A DNA stretch of 64,000 bases from Podarcis bocagei (Eukaryota). A model generated the notes under the pieces. The model was given only the letters and a program-made list of their open reading frames with translations, did no database searches and was not told the origin of the DNA. Position numbers and translations under genes: made by a program. Location: NCBI GenBank assembly GCA_964188305.1, contig OZ076888.1. One strand, 5' to 3'. Each line of letters opens with the position of its first letter. The first letter of the stretch is position 1. This document shows positions 21,201 to 64,000 of this stretch, piece after piece.

Positions 21201-24200
21201 AGTGTTATAAGTAATTAATAATATTTTCAATTTTGGTAACACAGGGGCCAAACTCCAGCTGAATCAGATTTCCAGGTGCTTGAAATAGCTCGGAAGTTGG
21301 AGATGTATGGCATGAGATTTCATCTGGCATCTGACCGTGAGGGAACAAAAATTAATTTGGCTGTATCAAACATGGGCGTACTGGTATTCCAGGTAGGAAA
21401 GCAATATTTAACATGAGAAACTTTTTGTAGTTATGCAGACAGAAGACTTTAAACCCAGAGGATAGACCCATATGCCTGCTTTAGAGCATGTAGCAATTGA
21501 TTCTGAACGAATGGCTACATCCTTGCTATGACAGTCTTTGCAGTCCCAACAGACAATGTGATGTTTGCAAATGCCTTTGTGGCAGCAGCACTCTTTATTA
21601 AACCCAGATGGGATTAGTAGGGCACTATTGCAGCAGCTTCTTCTTTGAGACTAATGGGAGTGGTTGTAATATTGCCTTCATTATGCTGGCTTGGGCTGAT
21701 GGGAGTTGTAGTCCAAATGTAGTAGTAGTTGTAATAAATCTGTTACCCACCTTTCACCAGCAGGTCCTAGGGTGGGTTACAACAATTTAATTTTCAGAAT
21801 TAAAAACAGTTAAAACAGGTTGCAATCACAGGAATAGTGTGGATCCTGAAAATACATATCTCAAATGTCAAAGGCCAGAGTAGCAAGGTCAGGGAGGGCT
21901 GCTTTCAGAACTAGAGGTTCCTTTAACAGTCTTGTTGTTTTAAATTATCAGTTATCTGATCCAGACGATATGATTTAGATAGAAAAAAGGTTTGACAGTA
22001 TAAGTCTATAACTTATGTTCTGTTTAAATCCTCTGTATAATATACCTCAGTTATTTTATATTGAATTGAACACAGGGTAATACAAAAATCAATACTTTCA
22101 ACTGGTCCAAAGTCCGGAAAATAAGCTTCAAAAGAAAACGATTCCTTATCAAGCTTCATCCAGAAGTTCATGTAAGTACTTCCATTAGAATGTCATTTCT
22201 ACAGTTTCAAGCATGACTTAATTATGCAGTATTCAGTACTGTTAATGCCTGGATACAAGCTTCATAGGTAATAGCACTATGATAAAAGCATGTTAGTAAA
22301 ACCCATATTTGATTAAAGTCTGAATTCTGACTTGTCTTTCAAAGGAGCCCATGTGGGCATCTGCGGGGGGGGGGGGGAGTTTAAAAGGGGTCCTCACACT
22401 TGTAAAAGTTGGGAATCACTGATCTAGAGCATGTTCTCGAGACCTACATTGAACCATGATATTAAAAAAATATGCCCCTGGACCCTAGACTATGTATTTT
22501 GCCTATTTTTGAGAAAGGTGATCAGGATCTTATATGTAAACAGTTAATTGTATAATTTGTAGCCACTTGATTAGTTATTACACAGGGCTGGAAAGATGCT
22601 TCATGATGTACCCTAGATAACTGGTTCAAGAAAGTTAACGTTCATTGCCATCTCAAAAAAAAAAAGATGGGATATTTAAGCCATTGAGAGTGATGTTGAT
22701 CCTTCTGATTTCACCTCTGGAGGTTATTTATGGAGGGAGGTTATTGGGTTGTTCTTGTTTTTATTTTGATTATGTATTCTGTGTTTTTATATTGTGACAT
22801 TATCCTGTGAACTTCCCCGAGACCTGCGGGTATAGGAATTACTATTATTATTGACATCCCAGTCACATGGGTTGCAAATCCCTTTGAAATAAGATTTTAT
22901 TGGGTGGCTTCTATAGACAGGCAAGACCTTTTTCTTTAGTCCCGTTTCCTTCATTGTACAATGTAAGTGGTGTTTTTCTACCCCATTTACAATTTTATAA
23001 TCGAATCCATTATATTCACTCCTGATTTTTTCTTTTTCTTTTGACTTTATTATCAAAAGCTCCTTGTCTTGAATATATATTATTTGTTGTTATTTTTTGT
23101 TTTTCTCTTCACTTCTATCTATTTTTGTTGAATAAAGTTTTATTAAATATTTTCTCATTGTAACCTTAAATGAGTAGAGGTAGCATGATAAAGTCCCATT
23201 GTGTTTCATTTCTAGGGTCCATATCAAGACACTCTGGAGTTTCTTTTGGGAAGTAGAGATGAGTGCAAGAACTTCTGGAAAATATGTGTTGAATATCACA
23301 CTTTCTTCAGGCTGTTTGATCAGCCAAAACCAAAGTCAAAAGCAGTCTTTTTCAGCAGAGGGTCATCTTTCAGATACAGGTATGATATAACCCAGTTCAT
23401 TTTGATCCAAGAAAATGGAACCAAGAAAAACTTTGGAAGTAATTCCTTTTAAATTAAAGGTTTAGGATCTTTATTTCTTGAGTACAAGAAGCCCAGAATT
23501 TTATGTACTTTTCCTGGAGATTTTTTTGTAACATTCACATTTATTTCTTCACAGTGGGCGTACACAGAAACAATTGGTGGATTATGTTAAAGAAAGTGGG
23601 TTGAAAAAAATCCCATATGAAAGGTAACAAGCTCTTTTATATAAGCAAAGAGTCTTTAATGTTCTTATTTTGTATCTTCCTTAGTCTAGTCTACAATAAT
23701 GAAAGTCCTTTTTTCCTAGAGATTGTAAACTGTTAAAGTATTGTTGTTTTCTGGAGTTTTGTTAGCTTCAGAATTTGACATTTTTATATTCCAAATTTAA
23801 TTAATTAAAATGCTTAGATACTTGACATTGGGAATTATGTTGAGTAGGAAGGAGCTGTAATTGACAAACCATTTAACATGTTTCAAATTCAGAAAAGTGA
23901 TTTGATTGAATGGCATGAATATATGTTGGCTGAAATTTAACTTTCCTTCACATAGTGCCAACTGGAGACATGTAGTCTTTTTTTGTTCCAATGTTGTAAA
24001 CCATCTTGCATTTGTTCATTGTTATACTTACCGGATGGTATCCAGAGCTTCCCTTCTGCTGACAAAAAGCATCTGTCAGCAGAACAGGGAGGGAGGTGAT
24101 TTCTGGTCATTCTTCTTCCATGCTGCAGCCCCCTGCACACCCCAAAATTGGCTATTCAGAGTTTGGAGAGGTGTACCAGATCTTGAGCATCTGGACCACA

Positions 24201-27200
24201 TGAACAAACATTTTAAGCATTTTTTTGAATGTTAAAAATGTGTCCTATCCTGGATTTGTATTTTAGATATTTGTGTTGAAATTTGCAGAATATGGAAATA
24301 CATTTTTGCAGCTTTCCTCTTTCTCTAGTTAAAGTTATAATTTGCAGTCACTGTGTCTAACAGATACAATTATCCATGAATGACAAAATTCTGAGGCTCG
24401 TTGATTTATTACTATTAATCTTTATCACACCTAGCAGCCTTATGAAGTAGGTTATGCTTCAGGGATAGCTTCTTACTGAAGGCTCCCTGTTTGCTTTCTG
24501 TATATAGCTAATGACGTGATCAGGGTATCACAGCATATTCTTTCTTTACAGGAGGCATAGTAAAACTAGAATGTCTGCTCACACCTTGCATGCTGATACA
24601 CCCAAACAGGTTAGTCTTGATATTAACCTGTTTTGAATTATCAGAAAGATTATGAAACTCAGCCTTTTCATTCTAAATCGTGAATGACGTCTGCATTTAA
24701 AATTATATATATTTTCAATCATTGCTTTGTTCAGCCTTGTCCAATTCTGGTAGTAATGTTAAATATGTGTGTACTGTTGAATCAACTTCAGAATTTTTCA
24801 GCTTGTACAGGAAAACAATTTTTCCTGAGTGTTTGCCCGAGGAATTTTTAGCTTTTTTCTTTTGAATGGCAGAGCTCTGTGCCATATCGCAAACTGCATA
24901 TAAAACCTACTTGCAAAGGAAATTTGCTACATGGAATATATATGGGTGGGTGGGGGCGCCGTTCTAAAAGCATGAATCTTATTTTGGGCACATGGAACAG
25001 TGTAGTTCTTTGGATCCAGATCAATATTTGGTCCTAAATAATTCATATATCTTTATCAGCCAGGAGCTGTAGTTCATTATCGATATGATTTACCAGTGTA
25101 TAGAAAATAAATCTCCTTACTGTTGCAATAACAAAAACTTTTCTATGGATGCCATTTCAGAGTGTCAAGATTTCATGCATAATTACTGTTACAGTTAACA
25201 CAGTCATATAATGAATCAACTTTCTCTGGTCCCAAATCCAGAATTCTAAACCAACATAGTGCTCTCATGTAGACCTTAGGAGGAAGAGTTATCTATAAGA
25301 AACCCAGGGCCAGTTTTCTCCATTCACCTACTCCGAACATTATATCTGGAAAACATCATTAGTCATACTATGAAGAGTTCATTCATCCTCAATTTAATAT
25401 AATAAAGATACATCACCTCACAATAATTCCCTCTGCCATTTTATAAAGACCTAACAGGGCCACTTCTACATAAAAGAATAAAGGAATGAATGCAAAACAG
25501 ACATGAAAAATCTAGAGAAACCAGTGAGTGATCAATACAATCTGCCTATGTCTAATAGTCACATACTGCATGTATCCTTCCACCATATCTGAAGAAATAG
25601 GCTTTCAAAGCTCAAGACTCAATGAAATGGTTACCTTTAAAAAGTTGGCACAATATGCTTTTTTCTAAAATTAATACAAATCATGGATGACTGAACATTT
25701 GAGCCAGATTTAAAATGCCATAGATAGAGCAGAGGGCACTGATTCACCCACCTTTGTCATGTGGTAGTGTCTCTCACACTGAAAACGGGCAAGGATGAGT
25801 CCCACAGTCTTCACAGCCAAGTCATCTCGGTAAAATTCATGAACATAAACATGTTTATCTGTCAATTCAAGTGGACATGGTTAGATGTATCCTAAAACAG
25901 ATTGTCTAATAGCTTCCTCTCTTGTTTTTCTCCTCAGAGTGCCTCATTTACAGATGGATTAAGAACCTCTGGGCCTAATGCATGTACATATGCCTCCTTT
26001 CATTCGGATAATGCGTTAGCCACAAACATTGCCAGCTTGCCCACTTTCACAGAGAGCAAGCCTTTATTTTTGGAGCCCAGAATATCCCATACAAGGAGCT
26101 TGGCCGCAGAAGCAAATAGTGGGACATCAGAAGAAACTGGGAAGAAAGTGATACAGCAGCCTGGATCACCAGTACTCCAGTCATTCCAAGGTGTTGGGCT
26201 TTGTCATGTTGCAGAAAACTGCACCCCCACTTGTACTGATGTTGAGAGTAGCTGTGGTTTAGGTGTAGTAGTAGAAGGTAGGATTACTTGTAAAAATGAC
26301 AATTATGTGGATGACTTTACCACAGGTATGGCCATTGCTGCTAAACAGCATCTGCCTCAAGGTAGGGGTGCCTCACTTGTAAAACTGGTTAGCTCCCAGC
26401 TTCAGGTTTCAGAAGAGTTCATTGATGATGATCCAGCAGAAATGTCCTTTTTTGCTGGAGGTTCTGAAGCATTTTCCTATTTGTATGATGGTTTAGATTT
26501 GCAGGAGTCAGATCTAACTAATTGTCTCTCAGAGTCACCTGCTTTAACTAAAGAAATTCTGCAAAGAAATATGATGTCTTCTCAGTCAAGTCCTGATAGG
26601 TGCTCCATAGAAGCAGTAGATATGAACATGGACCATGAGTTTGAATTTGAAGGAGAGAGTGATTTTAATGGGAATGAACAGCCATCAGATACCTCGGAAT
26701 TGTTTGAAGTTAAAGCTCAGGCAAGCAGAATGCAAAGTCTTCTGAGTCCTTCTGAAACTAGTTCACTAATTAACAACCGTTCTGAAAGTAGTTCTCTCAA
26801 CAATTTGACATTAAATGGTATGCCATTTTTGCACACTTATAGCTCTGCTAATCACTCTGAAGCTAGTTCAATGGTGAATTTTCCAGCATATTCAGTTCGC
26901 TCTGAGTCAAGTTCAGCTTTTCAGTTCACTGACATTATTGACCAGTTGGAACAGCTGAGCTATCCACCTACCACTACAGAAGACTCTAGTAGCACTGATG
27001 ACTCATGGGATTCAGAAACTGCAGCCCCATTAGACATAAACCTCTTTTTCAACAACCCCTTTGCTGAGGCTACTAGAGAGAATTTCACTCTTGATTTTCA
27101 GAATAATCTTAAGAATCTCACCCAGGAAGATAAAACAGAAGACACACACACAAGCCATTAATATTTTGGTTGATATTACGTTAATTTATGCTTTCGGGAA

Positions 27201-30200
27201 TCTGGTTTTGAAAGAGAAAAGATAATGTAGATTGTTTCTGACCAGGTTCATTCTAGTGATTGGATTTCAAATTCATGTCCTTTTTTTAAATCCTTATCCC
27301 AATTTTTCTCAAGCCATCATAAATTAGTTGCTACTTTGAAGTATAGATGTCAGTGGTGCAGACTAGCCATTATAATTTTTCTAATGTATTGTACTATGCA
27401 TTTTTTTATCACCCAGCAGTTGTTTAAACCATCTGTGGTGAAGGCCACTGCATCACTGTATTTTGAACTTAGGTACACTTTGCAAATAACAAACCCTCTA
27501 CAAAGCATCGCTGCTGATGAGCAGTAAATGTCTTGAAAGGCCATTGGCATATTTTGTTCTTCCTTGTTGGTGCTTTGTTAGAATTTTAACTCATTACTCT
27601 GCAGAAACAAGCCTATAACACAGGGATAGGGAACCTGTGGTCCCCCATATGCTGTTGGACTACAAATCACATCATGCATGACTATTGGCCATGGGAGATA
27701 GAGTAGAACATCATCTGGAGGACCACAGGTTCCCCACCCCTGCTGTAACTTAACTGAATCAATATGAAAGGTTTGCTTGAGCTTTTATTTGAAGATGGTA
27801 CTACTTCAAGGAAATGATCTTATTATTGTTAGACTATGAATATACAAGTGGTATTGAAAGACTACATTATGGCGGTAAGAGAGTTGGCAAACCTGGTTCT
27901 CTCAGGTCTCCTGATAGACATTGAAGAATGTATTTAAGTTGCAAAGCAGGAAAGCAAACCTTGTACAGGAAATAAACTAAAATACTGTTAGGCCTGTGTC
28001 TGAAAGGATTATATCTTGAGTTAATTAAATAGGCTTGTGTATCTTTCCATTATAATTTCCTAATTATGCCTGTGTGAAAGGGAAGATTGTGCAATATATG
28101 AACTTCACCAGATTTTCTGTGGTGGTGGTGGTGGAGAACCAGGCACATCTGGTTTGTATACTCTGTGATAATTGTGTTTTCACTGTGGATTTCCTATCAT
28201 ACTTTAAAAAACCACTTTCATAATCCTCCTGACCAAATTCTTATTAGACTGATTTTATCAGTGTGCAGCTCAGCATAATGGAGCGATTGCCTTCGGGCTG
28301 CCAATTAGTTTGCTTTTTGTTCTGAGTCGTTCCACATACAAGATTCACTTTCACTAGTAGTTTATCATACCTGTAGTGATATGCTCCATGTGCCTGAAAT
28401 GGTTAAATCAGCAAGAATTTATACTAGTTGTGGTAGTAGCACATTAAATAATACATATAGTAAACCTGCAACTTAACCCGGGGGTTACGTTCCAAGGATC
28501 GCGCCTGAAGCCAAATCACATAAAGGCAAAACACACTGGGTTCCAATGCGGGTGGGATTGCCAAAGTCTTTTCCCCAGGACATCCCTTCCATTTTTAAAA
28601 AAGTGTTGTTGTTGTTTTGGCCAAACACATAAAGCTGGATGTGCACAAGTTGCTGGCTTACTGTACCATGGAATGCAATCTTTAGATGTCAGATTTTTTT
28701 TAAAAATCAGACATCTCTGCCCCTCTACTTTTTCAGAGAAGTACCAGGACTCTGTAGGGCCAGGTTGTGCTTCATGTGGGTATGTGGAGAATATCTGCAA
28801 ATATTCTATATTTAACTTTGATTTTAAGTATTGCTTTGCTTATTCTAAAGCTATGTCGGTGATGCCATAAAGTTATATTACTAGATTAAAGGGTTTTTCC
28901 CCCACTTTTGCCAACCATAATTCAGAAAGGACTTTGCTTAAGTAAGATTTTAAAGTTAAGAATACATGCACCTTTGCTAATACAGGCTAGGAGTTCTAAA
29001 ATTAGATATTGGTCGTGATCAATGACTGGTGGTACATGCCGAGATTGTACAAATAACTTCGGTTAATAAATGGTAATGAGAGGTAATTGTATTTCTTCTC
29101 AGAAACAACATATCTATGGCAATCCACTTCTGAACTCTTGGCACAGTACAGCTAATTTCCTGTTAAAGCTTCCTATTGAATAGGTCAGTTCAGTTACTAA
29201 AATCAAACAACCTTTTCCTTTCCATTTGGAGCATTGCACAACACCCATATTTTATTCAAGACCATCATAATTAAATGCAAGATTGGTCAAATGCAGGTGC
29301 ATTTTCTAGATGTGTCTGTTAACTTCCACAGAGGCTTTTCTAGTAGCTGTTGTGCTTAAATATGTTGCATGTTTTGAAATTAAATAAAATATTCAGGATT
29401 TGTTTGGATTCCATGCCCTTCTGTTTTGTAAGTACTTGTAGGGTACTTCCCTATGAACATCTAACATTTTTTTTTAAAATAGTATTTTTTAGCATCATAG
29501 TTTTTCTGTTTTAAACACATTAAATTGCCTTCATTCCCAATATGAGATTGTTCCTGAACTCTCAAACTTTTTAGGTAAGTCTGAACCTGTTATTTATTCT
29601 TAGTGAAATATAGTTAAAAATAAATTTCGCAATACCATACTCAGCTTCTGTTTATCTCCAAGCTGTGAAGTTATGGACTGACAAGGTTATGTTGATTGAA
29701 GTTGGGACTGATATGCATAGCAGAAAAGAAAGGTGTTGGATCAGCTGGTTAGTTTCCAGTAGTGTGGTGGTTTTTTTTAAAGAATTCAGAATGTAGACAA
29801 TGGAGGGCTGATCTAGAAGTTGTAAGGAACCAGAGATTTGCTCTGCCTCTTGATTGCAGACCTCACGGAAGACCTTGGGCTTGTGTATAGAAAGATTTCC
29901 CTTTTTATTATACTCCATGGGGAGATCTCTTGCACTTTCTTAGTTCTCATAGTGTATTCTACTTTCTTCTGAGAAACTTGTCATAGTTCAAGTCTGTTTT
30001 GTTCAGTATTAAACCATCTATGCTACAGAAGATGAACATTTTTGTTCACCCTAGTCATATCTTGTGATATCGTTAATTTTACTAGTTTTATTATTATTTT
30101 TACTTTTTGCTCATTTCCCGCTTCTGTTAGTACAAACCTAGTTGTTGGTAGAAAAACTTGCCTAGAATTCCAGTTTTAAAATAAATGTGCATGTGTGTTG

Positions 30201-33200
30201 CAGATTATAGCAAGTAGCAGCTGATTGCCTCAGGGTCAACTGGCAGGTGGGGAGCAAATTCACAAAGTGAATGTTCCTCTGACATTAAGATACATTAGGG
30301 AAAATCAAAAATCTGTACATAATAGGTAGCTTTTTTCATAGTTGCAGAAACATCCATGCAAGTGAGTTTGCTCCATTGTACACTGATAAAGTATTTGACT
30401 GCACTTTATGGTACATGGGTATGTAGTATTAAATACTTCAGATTTTAATCAGATATACTCAAAGCATTCTTTACTGACATTATTATAGGTTTATAATCAT
30501 TCTGCATTTAAACATATTTATTTTGACCCAATTAAAAATAAAGGATGAGTTGATTGATGGAATATGGTTGAATGCTGTAGCTTGACAAACATATACAGTT
30601 AAGCTTTGGCAGAACTGTCCACACATAATTTATAATGTTGTATCCATTGTAGAATTAAGTATATAATTTGCTATTAAAGCAATTTCTTTTTCTAATAATT
30701 ATTTACCACTTGACTTGAGTAGTGACATGCTTATTTGCAATCTGGTTCACTTTTAAATTCAGTTTACTAACCTTAAAAGACTAATGAAATTCCTATCAGA
30801 TATATTCTTATGGATGGTGTGTGTGTGTTAAGCCTTTAGAAGAGCATTAATTAAAAATCTGTTGGTAATTCATTCCCATTATTGTCATTTTGCCGAGTCT
30901 TAAGCTTTCAGGTATTACATGCAATAGTTAGGCTTTCATTGCAAATGTCTCAGTACTGATTCTCACAATGGTCACTTATCTTTAATAGTCAAACCCCCCA
31001 CCCAATTAATGCAGTATATATATACATACTTGTATGCACATGCTAAATAAATTAATATTGTGAGTTTTTTGCAGCTCTTCATGCTTAACTTCAGCTCCAG
31101 CTAGATATTTTACTCCTTGTTTGTGAAATTTTAGGGGGTTCATCCACTTAATGAAGAATTTGATTTTCAATGGTTCATCAGTACTTAAAATCGGTATGAG
31201 TGAGATCATAAGAAACAGTTTGGCATATTTAGGGCCAAGTCATAGCTTTAGTATGTGGAGCACATAAAAAATACAGACTCTCTGTATTGGCAACTGACTG
31301 CAAAGGTTCAGAACATACTGGACATACATATAGTAAAGCTTTATGCTTCAAATGATTTGTGCCTTAGTATGATTCGTTTCTTAGTACAATTGATACATAT
31401 TCAGGAAAAAATACATTTATTGGACTGGAAATTCTTACTACAACTTTTTGATCATGATCATTTTTATACTCCAGATGTTTGTTTTATACTTTTTGTTTTC
31501 TGTTGAAATTATTGATGATATATCTACAAATTTGTACTAATTTGAAATTGTTTATGCAATAAAATGAGGAAGTCTTTGATATGAATGATAAATTTGCTTT
31601 TACCTTTCATTAATGGTTTTGTTTTTAAAAAAGGCTTACTACTTTATTTTGTAAGGCTGCCTTACTTTAGAAGTGTAGTAGCTCTTGATAATGCAACGAT
31701 TTATTCTGGAATACAACAGCGAATTTATCTTGAACCATTTTTACTCTGTTCTTTCTTTAAAACAAACTGGCCATGATCATAAGTTGTTGCTTTAGTCTTA
31801 CATATTCTATGAATATCTATAGTATAAATTATATACACAAACACAAGTAAAAATCTACTTAGCTTGTTTCAGGCAGATTAGTCTGTGAAGCTCACCAACA
31901 TTTAACTTACGGGACAGGCCACGAAATATCTAAGTAGCCTATGCAGATTAAGGAGTTCTGCGTATCCAAATATTTTATGGCCTCTCTTGTTTAAAGCTGC
32001 TCTTTCATTATCCATACTTGATTAGCATTTTTGTTTTACAATATTGCTTTAATTTGCACAGTGAACTACATACAGCTGGACCCCTTACGTACAAGAAACC
32101 ACCTGGGATTTGGGATCAAAAATCCTCAAAACTTGCTATAAAAAAGTATTTCTTCAACCATTTTGACATTTTCATATCTTTCTCATTTCTTTGTTTTACA
32201 ACGCAGGCTGTAACACTTTAGTACTATTCTACAGACAGAAAGTTCCTACAACACATATTCAAGTGCCCTGTGTCCCGCTATTTAGTACTTGATAGTCAAG
32301 CACTGTTGGCACTTGGTTGTGAGCTCTGCACATTCCCAGTTGGCTGAAATTTTGACACCAGTATTAACATTTCCCTCTTTCCTAGCAATATTGATATCTT
32401 CAAATAGCCAGTCAATTTTTCCTCTGTGCTGGTGTCACTGAGGGCAGATTACAATAATTCATAATACGGGTAATGCCTACTTGTAGGGGTTGGGGCACCT
32501 GCTTTCCTCCAGATATTGTTGGAGTTAGAGCTCCCATCATGGTCAGTGACCAAGGTTGATGGAAATTTTATTCCCACAACATCTGGAGGGCCACAAGTTC
32601 CCCACCACTGGCTATTCGGAGGCACCGGCCCTCAGTTTGAATTAGCATTGTTTTCCGTCAATGATTCCCAAGCCAAATATAGCTACCAGTTTGGTAGTTG
32701 AAGAGGATCATTTTTCTGACAGTTCAAATTTAAGTAAAATGCATCCTGATGTAGGAAACAGTATATTGACACAGTGGTAGAACTTCTTATTTAAATAGTG
32801 CTTACTATACTACCTGGAAATATGATTCCTCAGAAGGTTAATCCTTAGGAGTAAACCTGATGCACTGGATGCAACTGTACTGTAATGACAATCGTATTAT
32901 CAAGGGCCCTTTTTATTTTCAGACACAGAATGTAAAAGAGGTTCATCATATTTTGGGAAAGGAAATACACCCTACCGTCTCATTATAATATTAAGTTCCA
33001 TTTTAAAATGCTATTTGGGAGTGTTAGTAACCTCTTTGAGAGTATCTATGTGTGCTTTTGGTATCGTGCTATGGAACCATACAGAGAATTGGGTTCTGTA
33101 AATATGAATGCACAGAACCAGTTCTTTAACTACCATTGCAGGTAAGTAAAATATGCATCTTAGAACACATGGCATGGGTAAAAATGCTATTTCAGTTTTC

Positions 33201-37600: not shown

Positions 37601-40600
37601 ATCTGTTTAGCCATAACAGAGGAAATGGGATTGTTGTTGTTGTAGGTTGCTTTTGTTCAAAAGTCTAAATTCCTAGCTAATTCCAGTTTGACCTCCAAGA
37701 AATTGTACCTAACATTTTCAAAGACTGCTTTAAAATATTTGTGGGCTCATTAAAAAAATAATAATAATTAAGCAAACCAGGGGAGACAACTACTTGCAAG
37801 TGTTATGTCGATTTGGTGATGTGCCTGGTGGTATTTTGTTGAAGCAAAACCAATTTTTAACCTCTTTCTCCTCCCCACTTCCTTCCTAATGTGACACTTA
37901 GGTCCTCAGCTGTCTTCCTTTGTAATGAAGAGTCCAATGACTCTGAACCCCTCGTTTCATGTGAATATGAACACACCTGGCCAGGGCTCATCTCCCCTTT
38001 TGAGTCCTGTCCTGAGCGATGTTGGTGGTGCCAGGATAGAAGAAGAGGATGAGGCAAGGCGTAAGGTAAGGCAAGGACAAGGAGGGTGATTTGTGTTTGT
38101 TTGTTTGTTTCATGAGCCTCTGCTTCAGTTTCTGATTTCTTTGTTGGGGCTTATTCACATTTACCTTTCCTCTACTCTTTCCACACACAGTCCATGGTTT
38201 AAACCTCTGTGTCCAAGTTGCCCCCTCCCCCTTTTTTTTTTTGCTCCAGAGCTTTCCCTGTAAAAACCCACTCTTTAAATTTCAATCAGAGGAAACATCA
38301 ATCCACAGAAAACTTTGAAGAGTGGGTTTTCACAGGGAAAGCTTGGGGCAAAACAAAACAAAATAAACCACTTGGACACAGAGCGTTAAAGTGCAGACCT
38401 CTGCATAGAAAGAGCATGGCAAAAGGTAAGCGTACATAAGCCCTTAGATATTAGCAATGTGCAAATCTGCCAGTGCTATACTATCGTACTGTCTTGTGTA
38501 CTATTAAACTTCCCACACAATGGTTTTTCTTGACCTGTGTTAAAATAAATACACGACACTTTGCTACTATAAAACTGCTAGAAGGAACAATCCTTTGTTC
38601 CAGCTGTTTCAAAGTGAGATATGAACTAAATGCTTTTCTTTACCTCAAGAGCACCATTTTTGTCCTTTCTGTTTGTGGGGAATAGTTGTACTGTAAAACA
38701 TTAGAGACAGTTATAGAAAGTACATTAATTCCAACTCTCTGAGTGCTTTTCTGCAGTCTAATAATCCACTATTTCTTGTCAAAAACAAATCCTTCTCTTT
38801 AACACATTTTTCAGGTGGGAATGAGCTGGTTTTGTTGTTTAGCAAGCTCAGTTCAACCCATAGACAGTTTATCTTATTTAACAACCGTATTGATTACTGC
38901 TGGTGAATCATGCTGGTAAATCAATTTTGGTAAACGTGAAATTAACTAGAACGAAAGGCAAAACCCTTATTTTGCATGTCTAAGCAGGAGGGAAATCAAC
39001 CATACAATTAGGAGTTCTATCTTCCCACTGCAAAAATCATGAAATTTTTGCACCTTTGTATCTTACACTTAGAAGAATTTGGGAAAGTTTGGGGTTGGGC
39101 ATTTTTTGTGTTTGGAGTATGTTCCATAATCCTAATCTAGGACTTTTTCTGTTGAAAATAATACAGTAAACCTCAAGGTTGTGGTTTGGTGCCTTATCTG
39201 AGGTTAGATGAGGTATATTAAAAAGCAAATTTGTGGCTTCCTGTACCCATGTTTCTGTTTCCATCAGGCTCAATGTGACAATGCCAGTTACCATCAATGT
39301 CAGGAATGTGCACTACTAGTTGAATCCAATCTGTGAATTAGGGCCACTGCTGGTTAGTTCTTACCGTATCTGCTTGGTCACAGGTAACAGTGTGTTTCAA
39401 GCAACTAACTCTAGATCAGGATCAAGGTGTGGCTTAACGAAACTCATATTCACATCTCAGGTTCAGGATTCCTACTGACTCATCTGAAGAATACATTTGG
39501 TATATTTGATTCAAATATTTCCTTTAAAAGCCACACACTTCAAAACCATTTAGAGCAGGAGGCTTTGGTTTTGGCTCTCCTTTTATATTGGCACATCTGG
39601 ATGGTCAAAGGAGTCTTCTTATATAGCTCAGCCAAGGTTTCTTAATAAGAAACATTTTCTGTTTCATTTATTTGGGATTTGCTTTTATCTTTCAGAGGTA
39701 CCCAGCAGACAAAGCCTATTTCATTGCAAAAGAAATTCTTGCTACTGAACGAACTTATTTAAAAGACTTGGAAGTCCTAACTGTAGTAAGTGATTTAAAC
39801 CCACTTTTCCCTAAAAAGAGTTGTTTTAATAGTTGTATGTGTAAATTGTGAATTGTAAATTGTGTGCTATTGCAGTCCCTTAGCCTCAGGGTAAAATTGG
39901 TTATAAACTGGAATTTCCCAGATGGAATATTTGCAAAACGTCTCTTGTGCATCTTGTTTAGAGTATGTGTCTGCTGCCAGAGGACTTGTTTGATATTGTT
40001 GAAATTTGTTTGCATGTTGTTGTTTTTCTGGGTTCTTTGATACTTTTTACATTGCTGATACCAAGAACAGGAAGCCAAACATCTGCTTCTTATTTATCTC
40101 TCCTCTGCAGTGGTTCCGCAGTGCAGTTGTCAAGGAAAATGCCATGCCTGAAGGTCTCATGACCTTGCTGTTCTCAAACATAGACCCCATCTATGAATTT
40201 CACAGAGGTTTTCTGAAAGAGCTTGAACAGCGGCTAGCACTATGGTAAGTGTTAACATCATTGTGAAGGCAAACATTTGAATCTGGTCAAAAAGAGAAGA
40301 AATATGGTTTCTTTGTTTTAAATTTCCAGGTCTGGCATGCCTATTTTTGCAAAATACATATAAACTTCAGAGAGGTTTAGTTGATAGCATACAGTGTTAA
40401 CCCTTTTCTTCCGTTTTTAAAATGATTATTTGATTATTGAGACTCCAATTTGAGCTACAAATTGAAACAGGAAACATGGTTAGTTTGCTGAGAAATGAAT
40501 GGAAACAGTTTTGGAACTCTTTTATAGTTATTGTTAGTATGCTTTAGTTTCTAGAAAACAGTTCCTACTGGAAAATAATTGTAAGATTCAATTTCCCAAG

Positions 40601-49400: not shown

Positions 49401-52400
49401 TCCCGAACTGTGTTGTGGTTTTATCAAACCTGAATTTGTGTGGAATTTAAAATTGTTGAGGCAAGCTTCTGCAGTTGCCAGAATGGTAACATTGACTGCA
49501 AATTTTGTTATTTCAGTGGGAATTTATGGAAACATGAAATTGCTCTAAGTATGGGTCAAGCAGTGCTTTTCTTGAACCATAAATCACAAACAGCAGCTGA
49601 GCTCTGAAAACGTGCTTAGCTATCATTCCTGTCTCTATTTTTCAGCACTCGTCTGGAAATGGGGAAGTGGATGGAAGATCTAAATATGGCAATTGAAATG
49701 GCCAAGAAATTCACTGAGAAATCAGAGATGTTTCTAGAAAACTCAGTGTGCAATCGTTCTAACAGTGAGTAGCTTTCGTGCCACTTGTGATTAGTGATTC
49801 TTGGCTAGTTGTGCACACTTCAGGCTTCTGAGATGGAAATGGTATAGATTACGCAGCCTTCAGTCTTTTTCACGAAGTAACATTCCATACCCTCTCTGAT
49901 GCTCCAGATATTTCAGGCTTGGTAAATAAGAACTTCCAGCTGTTAAAGCAATAATAATGAAGTTTATAGTGTGTAATCCTTCCTTACCACCCTCTTACAT
50001 AGGAAAGTATTCATCCTTTTAAACCACAGTTCACTTACCAATCTGTGGAAGTCATTGAAATAATATCCTGTGTACTCCTGAATGTCTCATCATCTATGGA
50101 TCCTCCCCCACCACTGGGCCACTGAAGCACACTGTGGCATTCCTCAGGTGGAAATTATATATTTCTGCTACAAATCAAACCCTTCTAGCTTCTGAGCAAA
50201 CTTTTCAATATTTTCCCTATGTAACAGAGTGGGACTTTTTCCTATGCAATAACTTTGAGGTGTCCTATCCTTCAAATGATCGATTATGAAGGTTGTGGGT
50301 GTCAGAAGGAGAGTAACCCATGCATGCCAATTCCTTTTGTGAGGGGATGATGCTATTATACGTCAGCAATCCTTGCCGCTATCACCACCCCTGTGGCCAC
50401 AGCCTGTTAAATGTTTGCTCCCTTCTCCCCCCTCAGGATCCTCAGATGAGGTATCTCTAGAACAGGAGTCCGAAGAGGACATACATTCTTCTCGTAGCTC
50501 CCTGGACAGGCAGAGCCACCACCGTGCCAATACTACCATGCATGTGTGCTGGTACCGCAACACCAGTGTCTCCATGACAGATCACAGTGTGGCCGTCGAG
50601 GTACCCAGCAGCAGAGCACATATCACTATCACTTTCACTTACCACTCTGTCTGTCTTGGTTGCTGGTTTCTCTGCACTGTATACATGTGTGCGGTTTTAA
50701 CACCCCCATTTCCTTCAATAACGTCAGTGGTCTTGTGTGAGAGAGCAAATGAATGAGTAACCACAAGACGTCTGAAGATGTTCTTTGTATGTGTGACTGC
50801 ATGTTTCCATCATGTTCTCAACAAGGGTGTGCTTTGGAGAAGAAAAAAGATTAAAAGGGGGGGCCTTCCTTGATATATCAACAGCTGCCATTCACACTAA
50901 AAAGCCAATGAAATAAATCGGCTTTGGGGTTATGAAACCAAAAGTTTGAGATCTTGCCCACTGAGAACCCTGTTTTAGGTAAATTTGTTAAATCTTTGAT
51001 TTCTCCCCAAAGCACCGTGGCCCCTTGCACTGCTGATCTTAGGACTTACAAATAATGAACTTCATAACATTTTTTTTCTTTTTTCATACTATTTCTTTTA
51101 ACAGACCTTTTCGTGTACTGCCCTTTCTTGTTCTAAATCACCTTTTTCTCTCTTTTTCTCTTTGCCCTGCACCCTCTCTGCTCAGTTTTCTGCTCTCTTG
51201 CTGTTTCTCCAGAGCTTCCTCCTCGCTATTTGCTGGGCCAGACTCAGCGGCCCAACACAATCACCCATGTTTGCTGGTACCGGAACCAGAGCCTATCCCT
51301 GTCTGATTATTTGTGTATGATTCAGGTAAAGCTGCTTCACTCACTCTCAGTATTGATAGGATCTATGAAGACGGTCATTTTCTACTTGTACCATCTCGTT
51401 ATAGCTCTCTTAAACACTGTTCTAATGTGCAGAAACAAGGATCTAAAATATTGGAATGAATGGTAAGACATCCTTTAAGTCTCTTGCAGAAATCAGCCAA
51501 ATTAATCCCTTTATTAAGAAGAACCCTGGATACAGATGCCATTGTTTTGATGCATTTCATTTATCCTGTAGATTAGATAACAGCAAGATAGGTTCCTTCT
51601 CCCTCCTGTGGGGCTTACTCTTCACTTTACCAGCATGTTAACTTAAAAGTGGCATTGCTGCCATGTGCTCTGCAGGGCTTTTTACTGTGTGCTTTCCCTC
51701 AACATTTTCTGTCTTCTAGTTGTATTGTCTCCTTAACTAAGAATGCAAGCTCTGTGTGTTGCTTACTGGTTCTTAGCATGTTGTAGACAACAAAAAGCGG
51801 GACTTAAAGTCGCACAGTTAACACAGCACGGACATGAATCAGTTGCATCCATAATTGTTCTACCCTTTCAGAGGAGGAAATGCAGTACGCAGAGTTATCA
51901 CTGTGAAAAAGGGGTGTGTGCACAAATGGACATTACATTAGTAGCTGGCATACCTGAGAGAAGACACCTTGGTGCAGGATGCCCTTCAGAAGTTGCTAGA
52001 CACCAACTCCCCTCAGCCGCAGCCACTTTGACCAATGGTGAGGGGTGATGGGAGTTGTAGTCCAACATCATCTGGAGGGCACATTGGGTTCACCTGCCTT
52101 AGAGCCTTTTTGGTATGATCAGGAAAAGCCTGACTCAAACAACCTTTAGTGGAAACAGTGAAATATCCTATCTGGACTGAGTGGATCTGAATGGGGAGTA
52201 GGTAGCTCTGCCATAGAGCAGGAGTTCCTAAACTGCCGTCTGTGGACTACCTGTGGTCCATGAGGTTTTTGCAGGTGTTCCACAGCATGGCTATATTAAA
52301 CAGACATTCTATGGAATGCAAATTGTAATACAATAAACTAGAATATAAGAAATAAAAGCAAGAAAAATGCAATTAAAAACCATACAGCATCTGGCACGGC

Positions 52401-62400: not shown

Positions 62401-63955
62401 TAGGAAGCACTGTACAAGGGACTTGGATAGGTGGGAGGGACAACTCATCTGTCAATCGGGTGGGGACAGATAATGATCTGGTCCACCAGTCCACAAAAAG
62501 TATCCCAACCCTGACCTCCATTCTAGCTCCACTGCATTAAATGGAATCTTCCATGAGTGAACAAAAAAACAGAACAGAATAAGCAGACTCCAAAATCTAA
62601 AGCAAGATACGTTCTGCTCTGACAGTATCAGGGTTAATGGGCGAAACACTACAATTCCCGCACACTGGCTGTTCAGTCCCTCAGAGTGACCACTGCTGGC
62701 TCAGGGCTCTGCTCCCCAGTGGTAATGGACACCACACTGACCTTTTGGGACCCATGATGAGACATCCCTTTGTGCAGCTTATTCAAGGAATTGGGACGAA
62801 TGGTTGGTGGGAAAGTCCAGATTGGCCCTTGATCTCTCTCATCTGCATCTCCATCACTAGAAACAAGAGGGGTGAAAGTGCATTTCAATCAAAGAACACT
62901 GGGTAGAGGAGTGCCAAGATTTGGAGGGCAGGGCTTCCCCAACAGCAGGCTTTTCCAGCTTAATCTTACTTAAACGCAAACTCAGTGTTTGCATTTTCCA
63001 ACCATTATCAAGGGGCTAGAATGTACTTGGTACCAACAGATACCAAACTCATAGCCCAGAACTGGGTATTCATATATTCCATGTCACTATGCAATTATTT
63101 AAAGACTGGAAGCAGTAGCATGACAAATCGTACGTTGCTTTTTGTGCCCATCTGTACTTCTCAACAAGCTACATAAAATCTTACTGGTCCACCTTACAGG
63201 CTTTATTGGTACAAATACAAAATCTGTAGAAACTTAACTGAGCAATCAACCCTGATTATTTGGGTGTGGAGAAAGGAAGAAAGGAAAGATTTTCAAAGTA
63301 GGACAAATGTCTCAGAGGTTTAAAAAATATTAAGCAGGTTACAAATGTTTTTAAAATAAAATGGAAACATACATACATGTCAGAGTCATCTGAGCTTGAG
63401 TCCTCACCATGCCCCTCTGACTTCCAGCGTTTGTACCGGTCAATGAGCTCCATGAGAAATGATGTTTTCTTGGTGTAACGTGTGATAAACTTGTGCTTTA
63501 GCAATTCCTTTGCAGTGGGTCTCTGCACAAATACAAGAGATAAGGTGTTTTAGCTGGCAGGGACTAGACCATAAAGGTGGACAGCTACCACTGCCACTTT
63601 CCAAGGAGTCTTTTCAATTTGAACAGGACTAAGGGCTACTCTGCACATTCCTATGGGTGGGCTCATTTCCAAGGACAAGCATTTCAGAGCTCTGCTAGCT
63701 AGCAGCTGCCAGGTTTTCTGACCTGACACTCAGGCTCTGCTTATGAGAAGAGGCTGGAGCAACACTTACAAATCTGGGGTCCTTGTTAAGGCAGGCTTCC
63801 ACAAATTCCTTAAAGGGCTTACTGTGGTGTCCCTCCAGCGTCGGGGGGTTATTCTTGGGAATCAGGAAGAGAACTCTCATAGGATGCAGGTCAGAGTTTG
63901 GAGGCTCTCCCTTTGCCAGTTCAATAGCAGTAATTCCAAGGGACCATATATCTGC
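59457..63955 (-). CDS. STK25: STK25 (YSK1/SOK1, GCKIII Ste20-like kinase), last six coding exons; 5' part beyond window
   Basis: Spliced translation [82 protein letters not shown] matches STK25. Confidence 0.97.
59733..59879. mobile_element. Tigger-like MITE in the last STK25 intron
   Basis: TA|CAGGCAAC..GTTGCCTG|TA. Confidence 0.7.
60181..60317 (-). CDS. STK25: STK25 exon (C-terminal PDCD10/CCM3-binding dimerisation region)
   Basis: ggcag|..|gtaaaa, 137 nt, [45 protein letters not shown]. Confidence 0.95.
61703..61774 (-). CDS. STK25: STK25 exon
   Basis: attag|..|gtgagg, 72 nt, [24 protein letters not shown]. Confidence 0.95.
62742..62856 (-). CDS. STK25: STK25 exon
   Basis: tctag|..|gtcagt, 115 nt, [38 protein letters not shown]. 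Confidence 0.95.
63377..63522 (-). CDS. STK25: STK25 exon
   Basis: tgcag|..|gtatgt, 146 nt, [25 protein letters not shown]. Confidence 0.96.
63770..63955 (-). CDS. STK25: STK25 exon (kinase subdomains IX-XI)
   Basis: tccag|..|gtaagt on - strand, 186 nt, [15 protein letters not shown]. Confidence 0.96.
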
Positions 63956-64000
63956 CTGGAAGAAAAATGAGAACGATCTGTGAACACTCAGTGTTACCAT

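What the first reader, a model, noticed from the sequence alone, without database searches (positions are those of the whole stretch)
25938..27161. Hidden 323-codon extension of FARP2 exon 13: a GEF-less, FRMD7-like short isoform
Seen: the exon 13 frame runs stop-free for 971 nt past the expected donor (26190) to TAA at 27159-27161. This is by far the longest ORF in an AT-rich window and it has no transposon features. It encodes an acidic, Ser-rich tail ([53 protein letters not shown]). The donor it bypasses (AAG|GTGTTG) is weak. Known: the paralogue FRMD7 is FERM+FA followed by one long terminal exon with no DH/PH domains. Inference: read-through plus intronic polyadenylation gives a protein of roughly 790 aa that keeps the FERM module but lacks DH-PH-PH. 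It could act as a scaffold or competitor of full-length FARP2, making this one gene with two architectures.
Basis: partly seen in the sequence, partly recalled or inferred. Interest (0 to 1): 0.82.

Follow-up and report, generated by a model that had tools for sequence, protein, structure and literature searches.

The report
Conserved GEF-less short FARP2 isoform
The long open reading frame is a real, transcribed and strongly conserved alternative last exon of FARP2 that gives a FERM-only protein without the Rac-activating domains; gene databases already list this isoform (wall lizard, mouse and many other vertebrates), but no paper in the searched library studies it.

Summary
From the acceptor at 25938 the frame stays open for 407 codons to TAA at 27159-27161, running 971 nt past the donor at 26190. 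The longest open run in 30 shuffles was 174 codons.

The window is the FARP2 locus of a lacertid lizard. RNA contigs of a close relative show both outcomes at 26190: splicing to exon 14 at 37902, and read-through across the whole ORF and at least 2 kb beyond it. Upstream introns have zero depth.

Full-length spliced mRNA contigs encoding FERM+FA+tail (795-803 aa) exist in two other squamates, a bird and mouse. The tail is conserved from sharks to mammals. Its dN/dS is 0.05-0.12 in lizard-bird and lizard-mouse comparisons, and it is better conserved than the constitutive part of the exon.

Ensembl/UniProt list an 800-aa Podarcis muralis protein that matches the window at 401 of 407 residues, and mouse D3Z4C0 (795 aa). 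I found no paper on the isoform.

The tail is predicted to be disordered and matches no Pfam family. Its similarity to the FRMD7 C-terminal domain is positional only. An analogous FARP1 short tail does match the FRMD7 C-terminus (hhalign E 3e-10), which suggests the two-architecture design is ancestral. The competitor or scaffold function is inferred, not shown.

The parts
23216..23379 (+). FARP2 FERM-C/FA coding exon, upstream of the finding
   Evidence: Spliced RNA contigs with a joint 23379|23555; tblastn and blastn to P0019/L001
23555..23623 (+). FA-domain exon
   Evidence: Joints in the RNA contigs of X1, X2 and X5
24552..24609 (+). Exon ending in ...PKQ; its phase-0 donor splices to 25938
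   Evidence: Joint 24609|25938 in X1, X2 and X5
25938..26190 (+). Constitutive part of exon 13 (84 codons plus 1 nt), shared by both isoforms. It is a poorly conserved linker.
   Evidence: Lizard-bird dN is 0.43-0.50.
26188..26196 (+). Suboptimal 5' splice site AAG|GTGTTG, used by the full-length isoform and read through by the short one
   Evidence: Loose ends at 26192 continue as CCTCAGCTGTCTTCC, which is window 37904 onward (X1 contig and 5 raw reads of X23). It scores 6/9. The same nonamer is present in two other squamates and a bird, and CAG|GTGCTG in mouse.
26190..27158 (+). Read-through coding extension: 323 codons of an acidic, Ser-rich, conserved tail
   Evidence: RNA contig 26163-27741; 144 homologues from sharks to mammals; dN/dS 0.05-0.12; conserved blocks
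27159..27161 (+). TAA stop of the short isoform
27162..29199 (+). 3'UTR of the short isoform, the part shown here. It contains a dispersed-repeat fragment at about 27712-27748.
   Evidence: RNA contig depth of 25/48/88 continues to the end of the laid stretch
30850..30893 (+). Candidate 3'-end region: ATTAAA at 30850 plus a 39-nt block that is 95% identical to the last bases of a bird short-isoform mRNA contig, which ends in A7
   Evidence: Inference only; no reads were laid here.
37902..38065 (+). Exon 14 (…[11 protein letters not shown]…[12 protein letters not shown]…), the canonical splice partner of donor 26190 and the first exon specific to the GEF-containing isoform

Best explanation
The region 25938 to about 30.9 kb is a composite alternative terminal exon of FARP2. 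When the suboptimal donor at 26190 is used, the transcript splices to exon 14 at 37902 and encodes the full-length FERM-FA-DH-PH-PH Rac-GEF. When the donor is not used, translation continues for 323 more codons to TAA at 27161, and the mRNA ends inside intron 13 after a long 3'UTR. The product is an approximately 800-aa protein. It has the FERM and FA modules and a disordered, acidic, Ser-rich tail with several blocks that are nearly invariant across jawed vertebrates. It has no GEF or PH domains. Three things are shown: both RNA forms exist, the ORF is under strong purifying selection, and the same isoform is expressed as spliced mRNA in other squamates, a bird and mouse. Two things are inferred. 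The protein probably occupies the same FERM-docking sites on membrane receptors (such as class-A plexins) without activating Rac. Its conserved tail motifs, which are probably regulated by phosphorylation, probably recruit partners of their own. The isoform ratio would be set by competition between the weak donor and intronic cleavage and polyadenylation.
For: The ORF is real and far beyond chance. The window is FARP2, with STK25 on the opposite strand at the end. In RNA contigs of a close relative the graph branches at 26192: one branch goes to exon 14 and the other runs straight through to 27741 and on to at least 29199. Read-through depth is 25/50/73 against 69/79/83 for the upstream exons, and upstream introns have depth 0. 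Five raw single-cell RNA reads show the canonical junction. Complete spliced mRNA contigs encode FERM+FA+tail: L001 (802 aa on 2.7 kb), L002, L003 (bird, 6.6 kb) and L004-L006 (mouse, about 6.43 kb, found in 89 index blocks). There are 144 tail homologues, including Callorhinchus, a ray, Latimeria, frogs, tuatara, birds, marsupial and placental mammals. Tail dN/dS is 0.05-0.12 in lizard-bird and lizard-mouse pairs, with about 3-fold more third-position changes. Tail dN (0.13) is below that of the constitutive 84 codons (0.43-0.50). The Podarcis muralis 800-aa protein matches the window at 401 of 407 residues. The same weak donor is conserved.
Against: No protein-level evidence (mass spectrometry, Ribo-seq, western blot) was available. 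The 3' end was not mapped. Coverage was examined only to 29199, so retention of the entire 11.7-kb intron is not formally excluded for the lizard, and contig word depth is a poor measure of abundance. Among squamates dN/dS is higher (0.29-0.37) at short distances. Some database models in turtles, birds, frogs and a lemur splice the tail onward into DH-PH-PH (1294-1404 aa). That would make the tail an internal insert rather than a terminus in those species. The function proposed for the isoform is analogy and inference.
Confidence: 0.88

Rival explanations
1. The tail is an internal alternative segment: exon 13 would have a distal donor near the end of the tail, giving a 1300-1400-aa FARP2 that carries the tail between FA and DH-PH-PH. 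The short protein would then be only a by-product.
For: Database models of 1294-1404 aa contain about 91% of the tail followed by DH-PH-PH: Eulemur X1, Caretta X1, Struthio, Ciconia, Spea.
Against: The junction differs in every model. It lies after PLD in the lemur, after QATG in the turtle, and immediately before the stop in the ostrich. This pattern is typical of gene finders bridging open frames. The window has no GT at any of these positions. The only donor-like GT (7/9 or better) in the distal tail, at 26873, is phase 0 and therefore incompatible with the phase-1 exon 14. No such joint appears in the RNA contigs. The 40 codons after these points and the stop position are conserved from lizards to mammals.
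Confidence: 0.05
2. The read-through RNA is a retained-intron or detained-intron transcript that is not translated. The open frame would be kept for reasons other than this protein.
For: Coverage continues at least 2 kb past the stop and its end was not seen. No protein evidence was obtained.
Against: A 407-codon frame kept open in all jawed-vertebrate lineages sampled, with dN/dS of 0.05-0.12, cannot be explained without translation. Other introns of the same transcripts have zero depth. In mouse, the contigs from three independent runs examined have nearly the same length and the same last 80 bases (compared in two of them), which is not the full intron.
Confidence: 0.04
3. The ORF is a separate serine-rich gene nested in FARP2 intron 13, with its own promoter.
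For: One NCBI model (Galeopterus, 442 aa) names it as an independent 'uncharacterized serine-rich protein'.
Against: The frame is continuous with exon 13. Every complete mRNA contig joins it to the FERM exons. The RNA contigs overlap by 30 nt across 26163-26192 with the spliced upstream contig.
Confidence: 0.02

Closest known systems
Annotated FARP2 short isoforms in public databases (Podarcis muralis 800 aa, P0056; Mus musculus D3Z4C0 795 aa, P0095; Callorhinchus milii 800 aa, P0108; and others)
   Same: This is the same gene, the same exon read-through, the same FERM+FA+tail architecture and the same stop position. The window's exon 13 plus tail matches P0056 at 401 of 407 residues.
   Different: Nothing structural differs. 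The window comes from a different but very close lacertid genome. These entries are automatic annotations without functional description, and I found no paper on them.
FRMD7 (FERM domain-containing 7, the X-linked nystagmus gene)
   Same: It is a paralogue with FERM+FA followed by one long terminal exon and no DH/PH domains. Its terminal exon starts after residue 350 (…SKQ), the same phase-0 boundary as FARP2 …PKQ|exon 13. The length of the post-FA region is similar (about 350-410 aa).
   Different: FRMD7 is a separate gene with only this architecture. There is no significant sequence similarity between its C-terminal domain and the FARP2 tail (hhalign E 0.096; only an LQ[VL]xEE-like motif aligns). 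phmmer of the tail against 1.84 billion representatives found no FRMD7.
FARP1 short isoform (FERM+FA+tail; annotated in teleosts, Callorhinchus and a frog)
   Same: The paralogue shows the same two-architecture design. Two weak, colinear profile matches link its tail to the FARP2 tail (E 6.7e-5 and 0.0076).
   Different: The tail sequence is different. Its C-terminal block (SSGTESSDSESD…PRNKFSFGSLQLDEE) matches FRMD7 (probability 96.8%, E 3e-10), not FARP2. I did not check the genomic origin of the FARP1 tail.
Composite-terminal-exon intronic polyadenylation isoforms that remove catalytic domains
   Same: A weak 5' splice site is read through, an in-frame stop lies in the intron, and the truncated protein keeps the targeting module but loses the enzymatic one.
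   Different: Most such extensions are short and poorly conserved. Here the extension is 323 codons long and better conserved than the neighbouring constitutive coding sequence. The poly(A) site itself was not mapped.

Membership tests
FARP2 orthologue | FERM_N/M/C and FA exons followed by DH and two PH exons in one transcription unit, with best matches to FARP2 rather than FARP1 or FRMD7 | tested here: met
   tblastn of FARP2 proteins maps exons from 12116 to 55457 on the + strand, including DH and PH exons. Best hits are named FARP2. STK25-like exons lie on the - strand at 63.3-64 kb.
Composite terminal exon / intronic polyadenylation isoform | mRNA that continues through the 5' splice site into the intron, alongside the spliced form | tested here: met
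   Contig 26163-27741 runs through the donor, and loose ends at 26192 lead to exon 14. Upstream introns have depth 0.
Composite terminal exon / intronic polyadenylation isoform | In-frame stop codon within the read-through sequence | tested here: met
   TAA at 27159-27161
Composite terminal exon / intronic polyadenylation isoform | Cleavage and polyadenylation site inside the intron, upstream of the next exon | tested here: inconclusive
   Coverage was seen to 29199 only. The candidate site has ATTAAA at 30850 plus a 39-nt block shared with the A-terminated end of a bird mRNA contig. Mouse and bird contigs carry 3.9-4.1 kb after the stop.
Protein-coding sequence under selection | Frame preserved in distant orthologues and dN/dS well below 1 | tested here: met
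   Homologues with the full tail occur from chondrichthyans to mammals. dN/dS is 0.05-0.12 in deep pairs and 0.29-0.37 within squamates.
FRMD7-like architecture | FERM + FA + one long terminal exon starting at the …[SP]KQ boundary, with no DH/PH | tested here: met
   Pfam on P0056 finds FERM_N/M/C and FA only. FRMD7 exon 11 ends at c.1050, which is residue 350, and this is …SKQ in FRMD7 orthologues. FARP2 exon 13 starts after …PKQ in phase 0.
FRMD7 C-terminal domain (sequence family) | Detectable sequence or profile similarity of the tail to the FRMD7 C-terminal domain | tested here: not met
   hhalign of 40 FARP2 tails against 16 FRMD7 C-terminal domains gives probability 0.6% and E 0.096. 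There was no FRMD7 hit in phmmer.
Folded domain | Confident predicted tertiary structure or a Pfam match in the tail | tested here: not met
   AlphaFold2 with a 39-sequence alignment gives pLDDT below 50 for residues 319-649 and 654-800, i.e. nearly the whole post-FA region including the tail; the only sizeable helices in the tail are at 646-661 and 723-734. Pfam finds no family. The ESM Atlas gives only noise.

The most novel reading that the evidence does not exclude
The 'one gene, two architectures' design would be ancestral to the whole FARP1/FARP2/FRMD7 family. The ancestor already produced both a FERM-FA-DH-PH-PH GEF and a FERM-FA-long-tail protein by reading through the same exon. FARP1 and FARP2 keep both forms, and FRMD7 is the paralogue that kept only the short form. 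[quoted passage not shown] It would also make the uncharacterised FARP short isoforms natural candidates for FRMD7-like, GEF-independent functions.
Probability: 0.55. Interest if true: 0.6.

Novelty: already known. Interest (0 to 1): 0.36.

Why it matters
FARP2 is studied almost entirely as a Rac-GEF acting downstream of semaphorin/plexin signalling. This window, together with mouse RNA data, shows a second product without the GEF. That product has been conserved for over 400 million years by the taxonomic spread of hits, with a tail more constrained than the linker of the canonical protein. In the lizard RNA runs its depth is comparable to that of the shared exons. Knock-outs, knock-downs, N-terminal antibodies and expression measurements of FARP2 usually do not separate the two forms. 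Phenotypes assigned to GEF activity could therefore partly belong to the short form. The link between FARP1-short and FRMD7 offers a route to understanding the FRMD7 C-terminal domain. As a discovery it is modest, because the isoform is already in the databases. What is missing is any functional study.

Tried and rejected
- Pfam on the exon-13 ORF gave only TM231 at E 0.069, below its cut-off, so I treat it as noise.
- The ESM Atlas feature search of the tail had a best score of 0.70, which is uninformative.
- AlphaFold2 of the 800-aa isoform with a 39-sequence alignment gave mean pLDDT 42.8 and a disordered tail, so I ran no fold search.
- hhalign of the FARP2 tail against the FRMD7 C-terminal domain was not significant.
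- Literature searches for D3Z4C0, for FARP2 with intronic polyadenylation, and for FARP2 with short, truncated or splice-variant terms found nothing on this isoform. A FARP2 knockout preprint does not mention isoforms of FARP2.
- I considered and rejected the distal-donor, long-insert reading for this species.
- The mouse contigs end without AATAAA or ATTAAA in the last 400 nt, so their common end may be an assembly break rather than the poly(A) site.
- I could not test whether human and other anthropoid primates keep the ORF. None appears among the 120 listed tail hits, and no tool here holds vertebrate genomes.
- One first call to the Atlas used the wrong frame (26191). I corrected it to 26190.

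Full report
**Observation.** The stretch 25938-27161 translates without a stop for 407 codons and ends in TAA at 27159-27161.
- It is the longest ORF of the window: 419 aa by the mechanical ORF list, against 225 aa for the next.
- With the window's composition (about 39% G+C) a 408-codon open run has probability 2.8e-12 per start.
- Thirty shuffles of the window gave longest open runs of at most 174 codons, against 421 observed.

**Identity of the locus.** FARP2 proteins map by tblastn to a series of + strand exons from 12116 to 55457. These include the FERM, FA, DH and PH exons.
- The next exon after the finding lies at 37902-38065 (…[12 protein letters not shown]…).
- STK25-like exons lie on the minus strand at the window's end.
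- The exon-13-plus-tail peptide differs at only 6 of 407 residues from an 800-aa UniProt/Ensembl protein of Podarcis muralis (P0056). The window therefore comes from a very close lacertid.

**Transcript evidence.** RNA runs of a close relative hold 85-89% of the sampled words. I laid three contig sets and one raw single-cell run on 23200-29199.
- A spliced contig covers 23216-23379, 23555-23623, 24552-24609 and 25938-26192, with GT..AG joints. The introns between these exons have depth 0, so these are RNA libraries without a pre-mRNA background.
- At 26192 the assembly graph branches.
- One branch continues as CCTCAGCTGTCTTCC…, which is window 37904 onward. This confirms the canonical junction 26190|37902 (phase 1). 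It is seen in a contig of X1 and in five raw reads of X23.
- The other branch is a 1578-nt contig, 26163-27741. It runs straight through the donor, the whole ORF and 580 nt beyond the stop. Further contigs at the same depth follow to the end of the laid stretch at 29199.
- Word depth of the read-through branch is 25/50/73, against 69/79/83 for the shared upstream exons. This measure is rough, but it indicates a major form rather than a trace.

**Relatives.** phmmer of the ORF against 1.84 billion representatives gave 18 clusters, 17 of them FARP2-like (the weakest was an algal repeat protein); one was a 788-aa lemur protein and one a 781-aa cavefish protein with FERM+FA+tail. A tail-only search gave 144 hits.
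- FERM+FA+tail proteins of about 690-835 aa, without DH/PH Pfam domains, occur in squamates, tuatara, birds, frogs, coelacanth, elephant shark, a stingray and many ray-finned fishes.
- In mammals they occur in mouse (D3Z4C0, 795 aa), other rodents, opossum, dog, bats, armadillo, whales and lemurs.
- These are not only gene predictions. P0019 (802 aa) sits on a 2701-nt contig, P0053 on 4470 nt, a bird protein on 6599 nt, and the mouse protein on contigs of 6428-6452 nt recorded in 89 index blocks. All of these are intron-less, so they are assembled mRNAs.

**Selection.** I made codon alignments of the window against four of these mRNAs.
- For the 323-codon tail, dN/dS is 0.077 (window-bird), 0.111 (window-mouse), and 0.05-0.07 for the other squamate-bird and squamate-mouse pairs whose dS could be estimated.
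- About three times more differences fall at third codon positions.
- Within squamates, at short distance, the ratio is 0.29-0.37.
- The tail (dN 0.13 lizard-bird) is much better conserved than the constitutive first 84 codons of the same exon (dN 0.43-0.50).
- A 41-sequence alignment shows near-invariant blocks: [27 protein letters not shown]; DFNGN…[33 protein letters not shown]; and [51 protein letters not shown]…PLD-NLFFSNP.

**The donor.** AAG|GTGTTG matches 6 of 9 consensus positions.
- Among the 14 FARP2 donors I scored, it is the only one with neither +4A nor +5G.
- The same nonamer is present in two other squamates and a bird, and mouse has CAG|GTGCTG.
- This sequence is also coding (Q-G-V-G-F) in the read-through frame, so its conservation has two possible causes.
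- Three better-looking phase-1 GT sites lie at 26277, 26325 and 26361. No joint from them was seen.

**3' end.** That is not what the data show.
- Coverage continues for at least 2 kb after the stop.
- The mouse and bird mRNA contigs carry 3.9-4.1 kb after the stop.
- The last 39 bases of the bird contig, which ends in A7, are 95% identical to window 30855-30893, just downstream of an ATTAAA at 30850.
- I take this as the candidate 3'-end region, which gives a 3'UTR of about 3.7 kb. It is unproven.

**Nature of the tail.**
- There is no Pfam family and no informative Atlas look-alike.
- AlphaFold2 with 39 sequences gives pLDDT below 50 for the post-FA region; the only sizeable tail helices are at 646-661 ([15 protein letters not shown]) and 723-734 ([10 protein letters not shown]).
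- The tail is best described as an intrinsically disordered, acidic, Ser-rich region carrying conserved short motifs.
- Which partners bind these motifs is unknown. That the many Ser/acidic clusters are phosphorylated is inference.

**Mechanism.**
- Shown: one gene gives two mRNA classes that differ in whether donor 26190 is used, and the read-through class encodes a conserved FERM+FA+tail protein.
- Inferred from established knowledge of FARP2: the FERM domain docks on class-A plexins and the DH-PH-PH module is the Rac-activating part. The short protein should therefore reach the same membrane sites without GEF activity. It could compete with the full-length form or scaffold other partners through its tail.
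- The strong constraint on the tail argues for a function of its own rather than a mere truncation.

**Comparison with FRMD7.**
- The architecture and exon position match. FRMD7 exon 11 ends at c.1050, which is residue 350 (PMC3163398), and this is …SKQ in FRMD7 orthologues. FARP2 exon 13 starts after …PKQ in phase 0.
- Sequence similarity between the tail and the FRMD7 C-terminal domain is not significant (hhalign E 0.096).
- FARP1 also has an annotated short FERM+FA+tail isoform in teleosts, elephant shark and a frog.
- The C-terminal block of the FARP1 short tail matches that of FRMD7 with hhalign probability 96.8% and E 3e-10.
- FARP1-short and FARP2-short tails give two weak, colinear matches (E 6.7e-5 and 0.0076).
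- This suggests the dual architecture is ancestral and FRMD7 kept only the short form. I rate this at about 0.55.

**Rivals.**
- A long isoform with the tail as an internal insert is modelled in some databases (1294-1404 aa). The junction differs in each species, the window has no GT at those places, and no such joint is seen.
- An untranslated retained intron cannot explain the conserved frame.
- A nested independent gene is contradicted by the spliced mRNAs.

**Novelty.** The isoform is already annotated in the same genus, in mouse, and across vertebrates, so it is not hidden. I found no paper that describes it. Anthropoid primates are absent from the 120 listed tail hits. Whether humans keep the ORF could not be tested here.

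**Verdict.** The finding is real and well supported, and it is known at the annotation level. It is of moderate interest because the function has not been studied and because of the family-level link to FRMD7.

Noticed in passing
window 50439-50600 and 51248-51334 (+): Two neighbouring exon-like stretches both match the same FARP2 inter-PH linker segment (…[18 protein letters not shown]… and …[17 protein letters not shown]…). This looks like a diverged tandem exon duplicate and a possible mutually exclusive pair. The scan already noted it as s1-359589.
   Followed up: partly
window 27712-27748: A short dispersed-repeat fragment lies inside the short isoform's 3'UTR. RNA contigs break here, local word depth jumps (up to 1250 in X2), and many unrelated loose ends flank it.
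   Followed up: no
window 26277, 26325, 26361 (+): Three GT sites with 7/9 consensus lie early in the tail. All are in phase 1 and so are compatible with exon 14. They could give full-length FARP2 variants with a longer linker. No joint from them was seen in the RNA contigs.
   Followed up: partly
proteins P0207, P0353, P0379 and others (FARP1); P0218-P0268 (FRMD7): FARP1 also has an annotated FERM+FA+tail short isoform in teleosts, elephant shark and a frog. Its C-terminal block (SSGTESSDSESD…PRNKFSFGSLQLDEE) matches the FRMD7 C-terminus with hhalign probability 96.8% and E 3e-10.
   Followed up: partly
window 63256-64000 (-): STK25/MST-family kinase exons lie on the opposite strand, convergent with the 3' end of FARP2.
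   Followed up: no
one search hit list: No anthropoid primate appears among the 120 listed proteins that carry the tail, although lemurs, a colugo, rodents, carnivores, bats, whales and marsupials do. The ORF may be lost or left unannotated in that lineage.
   Followed up: no
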